From NCBI GenBank assembly GCA_965644265.1, contig OZ286466.1, positions 4,092,001 to 4,156,000 on the forward strand: a stretch of 64,000 nucleotides of DNA, given 5' to 3'. Position 1 is the first letter of the stretch; every line of letters begins with the position of its first letter. The position numbers were made by a program, and so were the translations under genes. The notes below the pieces were generated by a model. That model searched no databases and was not told where the DNA came from. It was given only the letters and a program-made list of their open reading frames with translations. The DNA comes from Glycera tridactyla (taxonomy: Eukaryota). Shown piece by piece: positions 54,601-57,600 of the stretch.

Positions 54601-57600
54601 AATGTAGCAAACCCAAAATCGAATCAGTTCTGTCTTTTGTTATTGTGAATGTACACACCAAGTTTCAATTAGATAGCTTTAGTCATTGTGGAGTTATTGC
54701 CCAGAAACCAAAAAATCACGCACCCACGGACCCACGCACCTACGCACCCACGCAACCACGCACCCACGCACCCACGCACGCACACTCGTCCATAGCACAT
54801 CCGCACAGTGGGTCAAGGCGAAAACATACTGCCCCGCTCGGGTAACCGAGGCGGGGCACAAAAAAGTTCATTATATCACTCTGATACAAGAATACAATCA
54901 TGGACAAAATGGATAAAGGAGACAAAGTAGCTCCTCAACTGTTGCGCACCCATCCTCAGGGTACAATCTACACATCCACTGTCACATAAACACGGATATC
55001 TTTTAACTGTATGCAGCAACATAAAAGCCAACACCATGAATCAAAGTTTCAGCAGGAAGCAATTCAATGCCGCATCTAGTTGCACAGAAGCAACAATACC
55101 GAGCCAAGAAAAAAGTGTAATTGACAGAAGCAAGCGTATTAAAAGACAGATCTAACACAGCACCTACTGCATGAAAATAAACAGTATAACTCTTCAAAAT
55201 GAAACAAATCCACCAAGCCAGTCAAATAAGCCGGAGATACCCTCAGTTATGTCAGTATTCAATCACCGTGCGCTGATGATGACAGATGAGTGTGAGTAGA
55301 GAATAGAACCTTCACCAAAGTGTGCAAAAAATGCGACCAACCACCTATGAAATGGATGAATCCCAGGTGACGACAGGCAAACAGATGGTGTTTGAATAAA
55401 GGGAGAAATCTATTGTGAGGCCCAACACAGACCAACTTCTGAGGGGAAGCCTCTATCTTGGGGTAACTCTTCCGACACCTCTCATGAGAGTTCGCCACTT
55501 TGAAAACGACTGTATTTGTCAGTCAGATTTGAGTTCCGAATTGGATTTGAATTTGAGAAAAGAGGGTATTTTTTCAGGAGTAGGCAATAGAATTTTCATC
55601 ATTGCAGAGTGACTGCCTTATCTTACTTCAATTCTGATAGAGAGCCTGCCTTTTCTGCGTGACCGTAATACCTGGGATCCGTGTAACCAACGTATAAAAG
55701 AAATGAACCAGAAGAGATAGTATATTGACAACATTGAAAGTGCCCCCAGAAGAAGTAAGGCGAGTCAATGCCTTGCTGGTGTACAAACCTTCTCATAAAT
55801 GCCCTTAGTATCGTTGTAGTCTACACTTGAATCGTTACATAATGAACCTATAGCAGCGGCCTCCTGAAGCACATCGTACTCTCCCGGCTTGACTATCTTG
55901 CCCTGAAGGTAACTGTACGGGGAAAAAAAAGCCAAATGATCCATTTAAAACTAGAAGCATCGGGCAACTTAACCACAAATCAAACCTTTTCGTAAACGCT
56001 CTTCTCCTCGACATAGTCGACGGAGGAATCGTTACAAAGAGCACAATCAACTGCCAATTCTTCAAGGCAGTCATAGTCTGATGCCTTTACAATGTTTCCG
56101 TCTAGATAGCTGAAAGAAAGAAAAAGGGAAAGGATTAATACATTGAGGCTGGAGTCAGGATATCTCCACATGCCCGCGGGATGGTGAGGATCTGCTCGGT
56201 TGCCATGCCAACTGTCGGGGAGAAGGTGGAATCATGCATTAATGATGGGCATCATGCCAGGAGTTCTGGCAACTAGGGTCATTGGAGATGGGCCTCAAAA
56301 GCACATCATTATGTTGAACATCTTCATGACCAGCTTTTGCCTGATCAGACACTGAAGAATCAGAAGTTTCTTGTTGCTCATAGCAACTAGACACAATCTA
56401 CATAGCAACGAAAAGTTTTCGGCCTTCTTCCACAAAAGACTTATCAAAGGTATGAGATACCATTATAGTAGGTTGGTTGACATATATGTGCCAAAATGAC
56501 TTTGATTTATTTGTGAAAGACTCGATTTTCAACTTGGTGTCAGTTGCATGTCAAGCTTCAGGATCTGATTCAGACCACGAATGAAGATGTTCATCACCCT
56601 ACTAAGACCATGATCCCATGAGGGGATCATACTCTTACAAATACGGACTCCGCTGACTTCAAAAACCTCTTTCTTCAGTGAGCACACACACTCTTCTGAT
56701 TAACCAATCATCACTTGACTGATACGTGTTGTCTATAATTCTTGGAGCAAGAGATATCCCGCGAATAAATTCATGCGAGTATATAAATACATGTGATTTC
56801 ATACCATGATTTGTATTTCAGGACAGATTTGACATCTGTTCAAATGATGAGTTCATGGTACTGATAGTAAGCTAGAACATCAGCAAGCTTACAGGAAAGA
56901 TGCGAGAGTTGGCTCGTGATGAAATAGGAGTTTGATTGTCATAGCAGAATGGAGGGATCGGTATGTCATGCACACGACGTCTCAACAAACCTTCTCGTAG
57001 ATGCCCTTGGTATCGTTGTAATCGACCGAGGAATCATTACACAAAGATCCAATTGTGCCCATTTCCAAAAGTGCATCATAATCACCAGTTTTCACCTTCA
57101 CGCCACCCTTGAAACTGGAGGGAAGCAAGAGAGACTTACGAATTAATGGGAGAGGACACAAATCCATCACGATGACATCATACAAACCTTCTCGTATATA
57201 CCCTTGGCGTCGTTGTAATCAACAGAGGAGTCATTACAGAGAGAGCCAATGCCAGCAAGCTCAATCAATGCGTCATATTCACCCGTGTTTGCTTTCTTGC
57301 CCTGCAGGAAACTACAAAATAATGCTCATCATCAACACCCCGTCTACCTGTCAAAATGATTCTAGAAACCACATCTCGCAGATATTGTTTAGAAACGAGG
57401 ATCAAAAATTCACTCAAAGGGTGCTCCAGTTTGGGTCATCAAGAGCCTAGTCACTAGATAATTTAAACTTCTTCAAAAATAAGTGAAGAAGTGAAGAGAA
57501 GTCACATGGGCAATGTGGTCAATGCCAGTCGCTAGTATTTCCAAAATTCTATACAGATACCGGCTACAGAGTACATAAAAACGGTCTTGATTGCAGATCC

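What the first reader, a model, noticed from the sequence alone, without database searches (positions are those of the whole stretch)
55789..57311. Four-member mutually exclusive exon array in the nucleotide-binding domain, covering the phospholamban-contact loop
Seen: four 124-nt exons, each starting in phase 2 and ending in phase 0, all keeping LCNDSSVDY and YEK. Their N-terminal ends differ (FLQGKKA, FKGGVKV, YLDGNIV, YLQGKIV). Known: the segment matches SERCA1a about 396-436; residues 397-402 are the cytosolic loop implicated in phospholamban binding, and the exon ends just before ATP-site residues E439-E442. Inference: isoform-specific regulator docking or nucleotide handling.
Basis: partly seen in the sequence, partly recalled or inferred. 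Interest (0 to 1): 0.88.

Follow-up and report, generated by a model that had tools for sequence, protein, structure and literature searches.

The report
Four alternative exons in SERCA pump
An annelid worm's calcium-pump (SERCA) gene carries four tandem, intact copies of one 124-base exon, built so that each mRNA can keep only one, which would give four versions of a surface segment of the ATP-binding domain; I could not test whether all four are used in transcripts.

Summary
On the minus strand lie four 124-nt exons: a 57311-57188, b 57114-56991, c 56109-55986 and d 55912-55789. All have AG/GT borders and align to SERCA1a residues 396-436.

Joining any single exon to the flanking exons keeps the reading frame. 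Skipping all four, or including two or more, gives a premature stop. The copies are old and under purifying selection: 37 of 41 third codon positions vary, against 19 first and 16 second positions, and the flanking introns are unalignable.

The gene is an annelid SERCA. Seven other annelid-like SERCA loci, one mollusc and one brachiopod were examined. Only Owenia fusiformis has several copies of this exon (three). All of these loci place the downstream intron 7 codons earlier, so this array is lineage-specific and independent of Owenia's.

I found no transcripts or close relatives of this species, so use of all four exons is inferred, not shown. The phospholamban-docking reading is speculative. 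Variation also covers the first N-domain helix and residues 428-433, next to the invariant Asp426 that salt-bridges the A domain. A docking/selector RNA scan was not clearly above shuffled controls.

The scan had already noted this stretch (s1-325551) and the whole gene (s1-325528). An adjacent two-exon alternative pair (61940-61852 and 61515-61427) is not part of this finding.

Verdict: a new instance of a known kind of splicing device, at an interesting site.

The parts
57188..57311 (-). Alternative exon a (124 nt). Encodes [46 protein letters not shown]1a 396-436.
   Evidence: acceptor ...ttttgtag, donor gtttgt, open in the coding frame. Scores 77.2 bits against a profile of 126 homologous exons.
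56991..57114 (-). Alternative exon b (124 nt). Encodes [41 protein letters not shown].
   Evidence: acceptor ...ccctccag, donor gtttgt. Lies 73 nt after exon a. Scores 80.3 bits.
55986..56109 (-). Alternative exon c (124 nt), the most divergent copy. Encodes [41 protein letters not shown].
   Evidence: acceptor ...ctttcag, donor gtttga. Lies 881 nt after exon b. Scores 65.2 bits. Carries I416D and N428V at columns that are 98% and 100% conserved in homologues.
55789..55912 (-). Alternative exon d (124 nt). Encodes [41 protein letters not shown].
   Evidence: acceptor ...ccgtacag, donor gtttgt. Lies 73 nt after exon c. Scores 72.7 bits.
57115..57187 (-). 73-nt intron between exons a and b.
   Evidence: The only introns this short that I saw in the gene. 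May be too short to be removed on its own (inference).
55913..55985 (-). 73-nt intron between exons c and d.
61427..61515 (-). Upstream exon, copy 2 (89 nt). Encodes [29 protein letters not shown] plus GT. Donor gtaagt.
61852..61940 (-). Upstream exon, copy 1 (89 nt). Encodes [29 protein letters not shown] plus AT. A second, two-member alternative pair feeding the four-exon array.
   Evidence: AG/gtaagt borders, 58/89 nt identical to copy 2. The same pair is present in Capitella, Owenia and L001. Transcripts P0173 and P0339 differ only in this block.
51125..51361 (-). Constant downstream exon (79 codons). Starts VGEATETAL (SERCA1a 437 onward).

Best explanation
This is a cluster of four tandemly duplicated, mutually exclusive alternative exons in the single SERCA (P2A Ca2+-ATPase) gene of an annelid.

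Each pre-mRNA must keep exactly one of exons a-d between the exon(s) for residues about 366-395 and the exon starting at V437. The exon length, 124 nt, is 3n+1, so zero, two, three or four copies put a stop codon in frame. Such mRNAs would be unproductive and presumably removed by nonsense-mediated decay. The 73-nt introns inside the a-b and c-d pairs, and the shared weak GTTTG donors, may add kinetic or steric control (inference).

The result is four pump isoforms. They share the invariant core of this segment: E412, C420-N421-D422-S423, D426, K431, E435-K436. They differ in three places: the exposed 396-406 loop, one face of the first N-domain helix (409-418), and the 428-433 hairpin next to the A-domain contact at Asp426.

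Most likely this tunes N-domain/A-domain movements, and so cycle kinetics, or the docking of cytosolic partners, in a tissue- or stage-specific way. Vertebrates achieve comparable diversity with separate SERCA1-3 genes.

Shown: the exon anatomy, the frame rule, purifying selection, the annelid origin and the lineage-specific distribution. Inferred: actual one-at-a-time use, regulation and functional effect.
For: Anatomy and frame. Exactly four copies.

SERCA identity: the next large exon hits SERCA1a with E=7e-84. DKTGT and PEGLPAV motifs are present. Exon d aligns to SERCA1a 400-436.

Selection: synonymous differences are saturated (pS 0.64-0.92) while dN is 0.20-0.44. Variable columns are 19/16/37 by codon position. 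Flanking introns are at background identity. The coding frame has no stops, while the other frames do. Every family-invariant residue is kept in a, b and d, and 9 of 10 in c.

Precedent in the same gene family: Owenia has three 103-nt copies of the homologous exon with canonical splice sites. In annelid-like metatranscriptome clusters, transcript pairs differ only in one exon-sized block, at the neighbouring 372-395 array (P0173/P0339) and at the M8 array (P0308/P0326). SERCA genes of this clade therefore do use such arrays one exon at a time.

Functional sites: Lys397/Lys400 with phospholamban Lys3 (PMC8184213). Asp426 with Arg134/Arg139 of the A domain (PMC8501872).
Against: I have no transcript or protein of this species. 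Searches with the four exons, with a full-length relative and with the downstream exon found nothing closer than about 81-85% identity.

No transcript pair differing only at 396-436 was seen in relatives. Mollusc isoform clusters are identical there.

All four exons score below every one of the 126 homologous exons. Exon c changes two otherwise invariant columns. This fits specialisation but also relaxed constraint.

The docking/selector scan gave no signal clearly above shuffled controls (one configuration marginal at -17.7 against a shuffled best of -17.5). The mechanism that would stop b-c or a-c double inclusion at the splicing step is unknown.
Confidence: 0.78

Rival explanations
1. Only one exon, or a subset, is really used. 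The others, exon c above all, are silent or decaying relics of exon duplication.
For: No transcript evidence was available. All four donors are weak (GTTTG). Exon c scores 65 bits against at least 80 for every homologue, and replaces I416 and N428, which are 98-100% conserved. Most annelid loci manage with one copy.
Against: Silent sites between all pairs are saturated, yet every copy keeps an open frame, AG/GT borders, a pyrimidine tract and nearly all family-invariant residues. Third-position excess holds in pairs involving c: a-c 13/10/30, c-d 15/8/27. An unused 124-nt copy of that age would be expected to carry stops or indels; the two non-coding frames of each copy already hold 1-6 stops.
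Confidence: 0.15
2. The exon choice specifically switches docking of a phospholamban-like or sarcolamban-like micropeptide on the 397-402 loop.
For: The array covers the loop whose Lys397/Lys400 lie near phospholamban Lys3 in vertebrate SERCA. The loop is the most variable part of the four exons: position 400 is K/V/N/K and position 401 is K/K/I/I. SERCA-regulating micropeptides exist in invertebrates (title and abstract of bioRxiv 10.1101/2020.07.19.211243).
Against: Phospholamban's cytosolic domain is a vertebrate feature, and no annelid regulator is known. The same loop is also the most variable part between species (column entropies up to 2.6 bits), so variation there is what weak constraint alone would give. 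Half of the differences lie outside the loop, at 409-418 and 428-433. Nothing here tests binding.
Confidence: 0.12
3. The four copies are an assembly artefact, such as collapsed or expanded haplotypes or a mis-joined repeat.
For: An assembly gap lies elsewhere in the gene (N run 44603-44976).
Against: The copies are only 55-71% identical in DNA, with unrelated flanks. They lie about 11 kb from the gap. Artefactual duplicates would be near-identical.
Confidence: 0.01

Closest known systems
Clusters of mutually exclusive exons made by tandem exon duplication (for example Drosophila Mhc, Dscam1, 14-3-3zeta and ABCC/MRP; human tandem duplicated exon substitutions, PMC9741552)
   Same: Adjacent homologous exons of identical length and phase, each replacing the same protein segment. 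Exon length is not a multiple of three, so double inclusion breaks the frame. The copies are old and under purifying selection.
   Different: No docking-site/selector RNA pairing could be detected. All donors are the unusual GTTTG. The exons sit in two pairs, each split by a 73-nt intron. Usage has not been shown.
Known SERCA alternative splicing (vertebrate SERCA1a/b, 2a/b, 3a-f; Artemia, C. elegans, pearl oyster), as summarised in PMC3527596
   Same: One SERCA gene yields several pump isoforms, said there to have tissue-specific expression.
   Different: As summarised in PMC3527596, the described events resemble SERCA2a/b splicing, which alters the C-terminal end (the C-terminal location is from my own knowledge). 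Here an internal segment of the N domain is swapped. My literature searches found no description of an internal mutually exclusive exon array in SERCA.
Owenia fusiformis SERCA gene (locus L039): three tandem copies of the homologous exon
   Same: Same protein segment and same 5' boundary and phase. The exons are 3n+1 long (103 nt) and sit directly after the same two-member upstream pair.
   Different: Owenia's exons end 7 codons earlier (DYND|gt), have strong gtaag/gtgag donors, and are spaced 310 and 185 nt apart. Owenia branches outside the annelid clade that holds the window's gene, and intervening lineages have one copy. The two arrays look independent.
Drosophila Na+/K+-ATPase alpha subunit (Atpalpha) alternative exons (recalled from memory, not checked here)
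   Same: A P-type ATPase whose isoforms arise by choosing among duplicated internal exons.
   Different: A different pump, a different protein region and a different phylum. It is a lead only.

Membership tests
SERCA (P2A-type Ca2+-ATPase) | Phosphorylation motif DKTGT and the M4 Ca2+-site motif PEGLPAV | tested here: met
   ORF 63113-63340 reads [59 protein letters not shown].
SERCA (P2A-type Ca2+-ATPase) | Best sequence matches are SERCA rather than SPCA, PMCA or Na,K-ATPase | tested here: met
   Exon 47784-48212 hits SERCA1a at E=7e-84, against SPCA at 5e-38 and Na,K-ATPase at about 1e-31. Full-length relatives are 78-85% identical.
Mutually exclusive exon cluster from tandem exon duplication | Two or more adjacent exons, homologous to each other, of the same length and the same splice phase | tested here: met
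   Four exons of 124 nt, 51-76% protein identity, same phase at both ends.
Mutually exclusive exon cluster from tandem exon duplication | Each copy alone gives an open reading frame with the flanking constant exons. None, or more than one, does not. | tested here: met
   All 14 combinations were translated. Only the four singles stay open.
Mutually exclusive exon cluster from tandem exon duplication | Every copy is maintained by purifying selection | tested here: met
   pS is 0.64-0.92 against pN 0.17-0.33. Variable columns are 19/16/37 by codon position. Invariant family residues are kept. Exon c is weaker than the rest.
Mutually exclusive exon cluster from tandem exon duplication | Mature transcripts contain exactly one copy, and each copy is found in some transcripts | not testable with these tools
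   No transcript or protein of this species is in the searchable collections.
Docking-site/selector (competing RNA pairing) control, as in Dscam1 exon 6 | One intronic site complementary to a sequence next to each alternative exon | tested here: inconclusive
   Duplex-energy scan of both long flanking introns against zones next to the four exons. The best all-four value was -17.7 kcal/mol, against a shuffled best of -17.5, and came from a G-rich window pairing with pyrimidine tracts. The other configuration fell within the shuffled range. No relative is close enough for a conservation test.
Steric-hindrance control (intron too short to splice) | The intron between neighbouring alternative exons is below the minimal spliceable length | tested here: inconclusive
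   The a-b and c-d introns are 73 nt. The minimal intron length in this species is unknown. The b-c intron is 881 nt, so this cannot be the whole mechanism.

The most novel reading that the evidence does not exclude
The four-exon N-domain array is a lineage-specific invention that arose after the exon's 3' boundary moved by 7 codons, convergently with a three-exon array in Owenia. The four variants would be deployed in different tissues. They would set either pump kinetics, through the N-A domain interface, or docking of a still unknown cytosolic regulator on the 396-406 loop.
Probability: 0.3. Interest if true: 0.65.

Novelty: new member of a known kind. Interest (0 to 1): 0.5.

Why it matters
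SERCA is one of the best-understood membrane pumps. Its isoform diversity is usually ascribed to gene duplication (vertebrates) or to C-terminal splicing.

A natural set of four interchangeable versions of residues 396-436, on an otherwise identical pump, is a ready-made experiment. This segment includes the loop that vertebrate phospholamban approaches and the hairpin that contacts the A domain. The set could show what this surface does for cycle kinetics and regulation.

It also gives a clean case for exon-array evolution. The array is recent enough to be lineage-specific, has a dated boundary shift, and has an independent parallel in Owenia.

Tried and rejected
(1) I searched the 5.8-billion-protein collection with an alignment of the four exons. 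No candidate was found, so no short transcript or ORF fragments carrying these exons are held there.

(2) I searched the representative library with the downstream exon. It returned only exon-sized fragments from metagenomes and no full-length relative.

(3) A full-length search with an annelid-like cDNA and a search with the downstream exon found nothing closer than 81-85%. The conservation-in-close-relatives test could not be run.

(4) Looking through 90% clusters for isoform pairs found pairs differing only at 372-395, at about 876-909 or at the C-terminus. None differed only at 396-436.

(5) A tree of the 34-residue exon copies was unresolved. It cannot say whether the window's and Owenia's copies are related by descent. 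The boundary shift argues that they are not.

(6) The docking/selector scan timed out on the first run. The reduced run was not clearly above shuffled controls.

(7) The unit-duplication idea, (a,b) giving (c,d) as suggested by the twice-repeated 197-nt period, is not supported by similarity: a-d 31/41, a-b 30/41, b-d 29/41, a-c 21/41. It is not excluded either, given saturation.

(8) I did not predict structures of the four N domains. Spliced proteins of this window cannot be given by reference, and I did not type them in.

(9) One relative's locus (P0362) came back without DNA.

Full report
**What is there.** The minus strand of the window carries most of a SERCA gene. It runs from residue about 256 at the window's right edge down to about 24.4 kb. 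The ORF list shows the M4/phosphorylation exon (…[18 protein letters not shown]…[16 protein letters not shown], 63113-63340) and the hinge/M5-M6 exon. The latter matches SERCA1a at E=7e-84, far better than SPCA, PMCA or Na,K-ATPase.

Four 124-nt exons lie at the reported coordinates:

| Exon | Coordinates | Intron to the next exon |
|---|---|---|
| a | 57311-57188 | 73 nt |
| b | 57114-56991 | 881 nt |
| c | 56109-55986 | 73 nt |
| d | 55912-55789 | 4427 nt, to the exon at 51361 |

Each is preceded by a pyrimidine tract and AG, and followed by GTTTGT (GTTTGA for c). The upstream intron, from 61427 to exon a, is 4115 nt. Exon d aligns to SERCA1a 400-436, envelope 396-436. tblastn over the whole window finds these four copies and no further or degenerate ones.

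**Frame logic.** The upstream exon (61515-61427) ends with two bases of a codon. Each alternative exon supplies the third base (T, T, C, T; always Val) and then 41 codons. The next exon (51361-51125) starts with V437-G438-E439-A440-T441-E442. I translated all 14 combinations. Only the four single inclusions stay open. Skipping gives a stop at once, and every multiple inclusion gives a stop 10-26 codons into the second exon. Productive mRNAs must therefore hold exactly one copy.

**Are all four real coding exons?** The copies are 55-71% identical in DNA, while the 40 nt on either side are at background identity. Synonymous differences are saturated (pS 0.64-0.92) while dN is 0.20-0.44. Of the 41 codons, 37 vary at the third position, against 19 at the first and 16 at the second. 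The coding frame has no stop in any copy, while the other two frames have 1-6 each.

Against a profile of 126 distinct homologous exons, all four score lower than any homologue: a 77, b 80, c 65 and d 73 bits, against 80-97. The homologues trained the profile, so they are favoured. Exons a, b and d keep all ten family-invariant residues, and c keeps nine. Derived states at conserved columns include C417G in a, b and d, T415G/A in a and d, L413A in d, and I416D plus N428V in c.

I read this as old duplicates under purifying selection with faster, copy-specific change. Exon c is the least certain.

**Whose gene, and is the array shared?** The DNA around the array has no close match in the collections. 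A scan of metagenome contigs with the exon alignment returned 35 loci, many of them full-length SERCA cDNAs from metatranscriptomes. With one of these as query, the nearest named proteins are annelid: Capitella, Platynereis, Lumbricus, Helobdella and Owenia. The window's constant exons are at most about 85% identical to any of them. A tree places the window inside Annelida with Owenia outside (SH-aLRT 99 for that clade).

I fetched genomic loci for relatives and counted copies by tblastn:

| Locus | Copies of upstream exon (about 366-395) | Copies of this exon |
|---|---|---|
| Window | 2 | 4 |
| Owenia | 2 | 3 |
| Capitella | 2 | 1 |
| L001 (ENA contig) | 2 | 1 |
| Helobdella | 1 | 1 |
| L043, L044, L046 | 1 seen | 1 |
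| Argopecten | 1 | 1 |
| Lingula | 1 | 1 |

None of the 35 metagenome loci has more than one copy.

Every relative places the downstream intron after DYN(D/E), seven codons earlier than here. All four window exons share the derived end YEK|VGE. The duplications must therefore have followed the boundary shift. The array is not inherited from a common ancestor with Owenia, whose three 103-nt copies have the ancestral end and strong donors. A tree of the exon copies is unresolved. Some arthropod-like fragments also have an intron exactly at YEK|VGE (P0022, P0026, P0043, P0048). The site AAG|GT(T/A)GG may thus be a recurrent intron position (inference).

**Is such an array used one exon at a time?** This could not be tested for this species. 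The four-exon alignment finds no protein. Neither the full-length search nor the downstream-exon search finds anything from this species or a near relative.

In annelid-like metatranscriptome clusters I found transcript pairs identical except for one exon-sized block. P0173 and P0339 differ only at 372-395, which is the upstream pair. P0308 and P0326 differ only at 879-893, and P0182 and P0329 differ mainly at 876-909, which is the M8 array. Several pairs differ only at the C-terminus. SERCA genes of this clade therefore do splice such arrays mutually exclusively. No pair differs only at 396-436, which agrees with the single genomic copy in most lineages. Mollusc isoform clusters are identical in this segment.

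**How choice might be made.** The frame rule is shown. Beyond it there are three observations:

- The a-b and c-d introns are only 73 nt, while the other introns I saw in the gene are 0.3-5 kb. This may prevent joining within a pair, but the species' minimal intron size is unknown, and the 881-nt b-c intron is not limiting.
- All four donors are GTTTG, a poor match to the U1 consensus. The two upstream exons have gtaagt. This fits regulated, competing use.
- A scan for one intronic site complementary to a sequence beside every exon was not clearly above shuffled controls. One configuration was marginal and explained by G-rich/pyrimidine-tract pairing.

The twice-repeated 197-nt period hints at duplication of a two-exon unit. 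Sequence similarity neither supports nor excludes this.

**What the variants change.** Mapped on SERCA1a numbering, the invariant residues are G399, Y407, D408, L410, E412, L419-Y427, K431 and Y434-K436. The variable parts are the 396-406 loop, helix positions 409, 411 and 413-418, and residues 428-433.

Literature places PLN Lys3 within cross-linking distance of SERCA Lys397, with Lys400 among the contacts listed (PMC8184213). It also shows that Asp426 salt-bridges Arg134/Arg139 of the A domain in E1P·ADP, an interaction that the paper says biochemical experiments suggest is essential for phosphoenzyme formation (PMC8501872).

Asp426 is invariant here and its neighbours vary. The loop varies most, but it is also the most variable part between species. 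The residues usually named for nucleotide binding (T441, E442 and beyond; my knowledge) lie in constant exons. I therefore favour tuning of N-A domain movements or of a partner contact. The specific phospholamban-type docking idea is a minority possibility.

**Novelty.** The review of SERCA evolution describes invertebrate splicing only as resembling SERCA2a/b splicing, which by my own knowledge is C-terminal (PMC3527596). Four literature searches found no description of internal alternative exon arrays in SERCA. That library is incomplete. The device itself, tandem duplicated mutually exclusive exons, is well known. I therefore file this as a new member of a known kind.

**Earlier notes of the scan.** They already listed this stretch (s1-325551: two pairs, 73-nt introns, GTTTG donors, which I confirm). 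They also listed the seven-copy M8 array (s1-325529, whose seven copies I confirm by tblastn) and the whole-gene reading (s1-325528).

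Noticed in passing
window 61852-61940 and 61427-61515 (minus strand): A two-member array of 89-nt paralogous exons (SERCA about 366-395; [29 protein letters not shown] and [29 protein letters not shown]) lies directly upstream of the four-exon array, with 336 nt between the copies. The same pair exists in Capitella, Owenia and L001. Transcripts P0173 and P0339 differ only in this block. It is not mentioned in the finding I was given.
   Followed up: partly
window 30955-42466 (minus strand): Seven copies of the exon for the L7-8 loop/M8 ([10 protein letters not shown]…MALSVLV.IEM.NA.N) lie at about 42466, 40752, 39187, 37820, 35949, 33437 and 31086. 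Relatives have 1 (Helobdella, L043), 2 (Capitella, Argopecten, Lingula; L046 with a third weak hit), 3 hits (L044) or 4 (Owenia). The last copy ([13 protein letters not shown]…) is shared across annelid loci and has a similar counterpart in Argopecten, so that pair looks ancient.
   Followed up: partly
window 55789-57311 against L038, L039, L040, L041, L042, L001, L043, L044, L046: The intron after this exon sits 7 codons (21 nt) further downstream here (YEK|VGEATE) than in every annelid, mollusc and brachiopod locus examined (DYNE|AKGxYEKVGEATE). Arthropod-like fragments (P0022, P0026, P0043, P0048) have an intron at the same derived position. How the boundary moved is unexplained.
   Followed up: partly
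L039 56481-57284 (Owenia fusiformis CAIIXF020000012.1): Three tandem 103-nt copies of the homologous N-domain exon with canonical splice sites. The deposited protein uses only the third copy. This is probably an undescribed alternative exon array in Owenia.
   Followed up: partly
window 54048-54796: The 4.4-kb intron after exon d holds a tandem repeat with a 147-nt period (three full copies; related shorter repeat families show four, with 173-217-nt spacing to the first), followed by a (CACGCACC)n microsatellite. It creates a spurious 222-aa plus-strand ORF (54177-54845).
   Followed up: no
window 60907-61063: A near-perfect hairpin (77-nt arms, 83% complementary, 3-nt loop) in the intron upstream of exon a. 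It looks like a small inverted-repeat element. It gave the only marginal hit in the docking-site scan.
   Followed up: no
window 44603-44976: A run of 374 N (assembly gap or mask) inside a SERCA intron. I left it untouched.
   Followed up: no
clusters of P0183/P0331, P0179/P0336, P0194/P0195: Annelid-like SERCA transcripts that differ only in the last 7-17 residues, which points to alternative C-termini.
   Followed up: no
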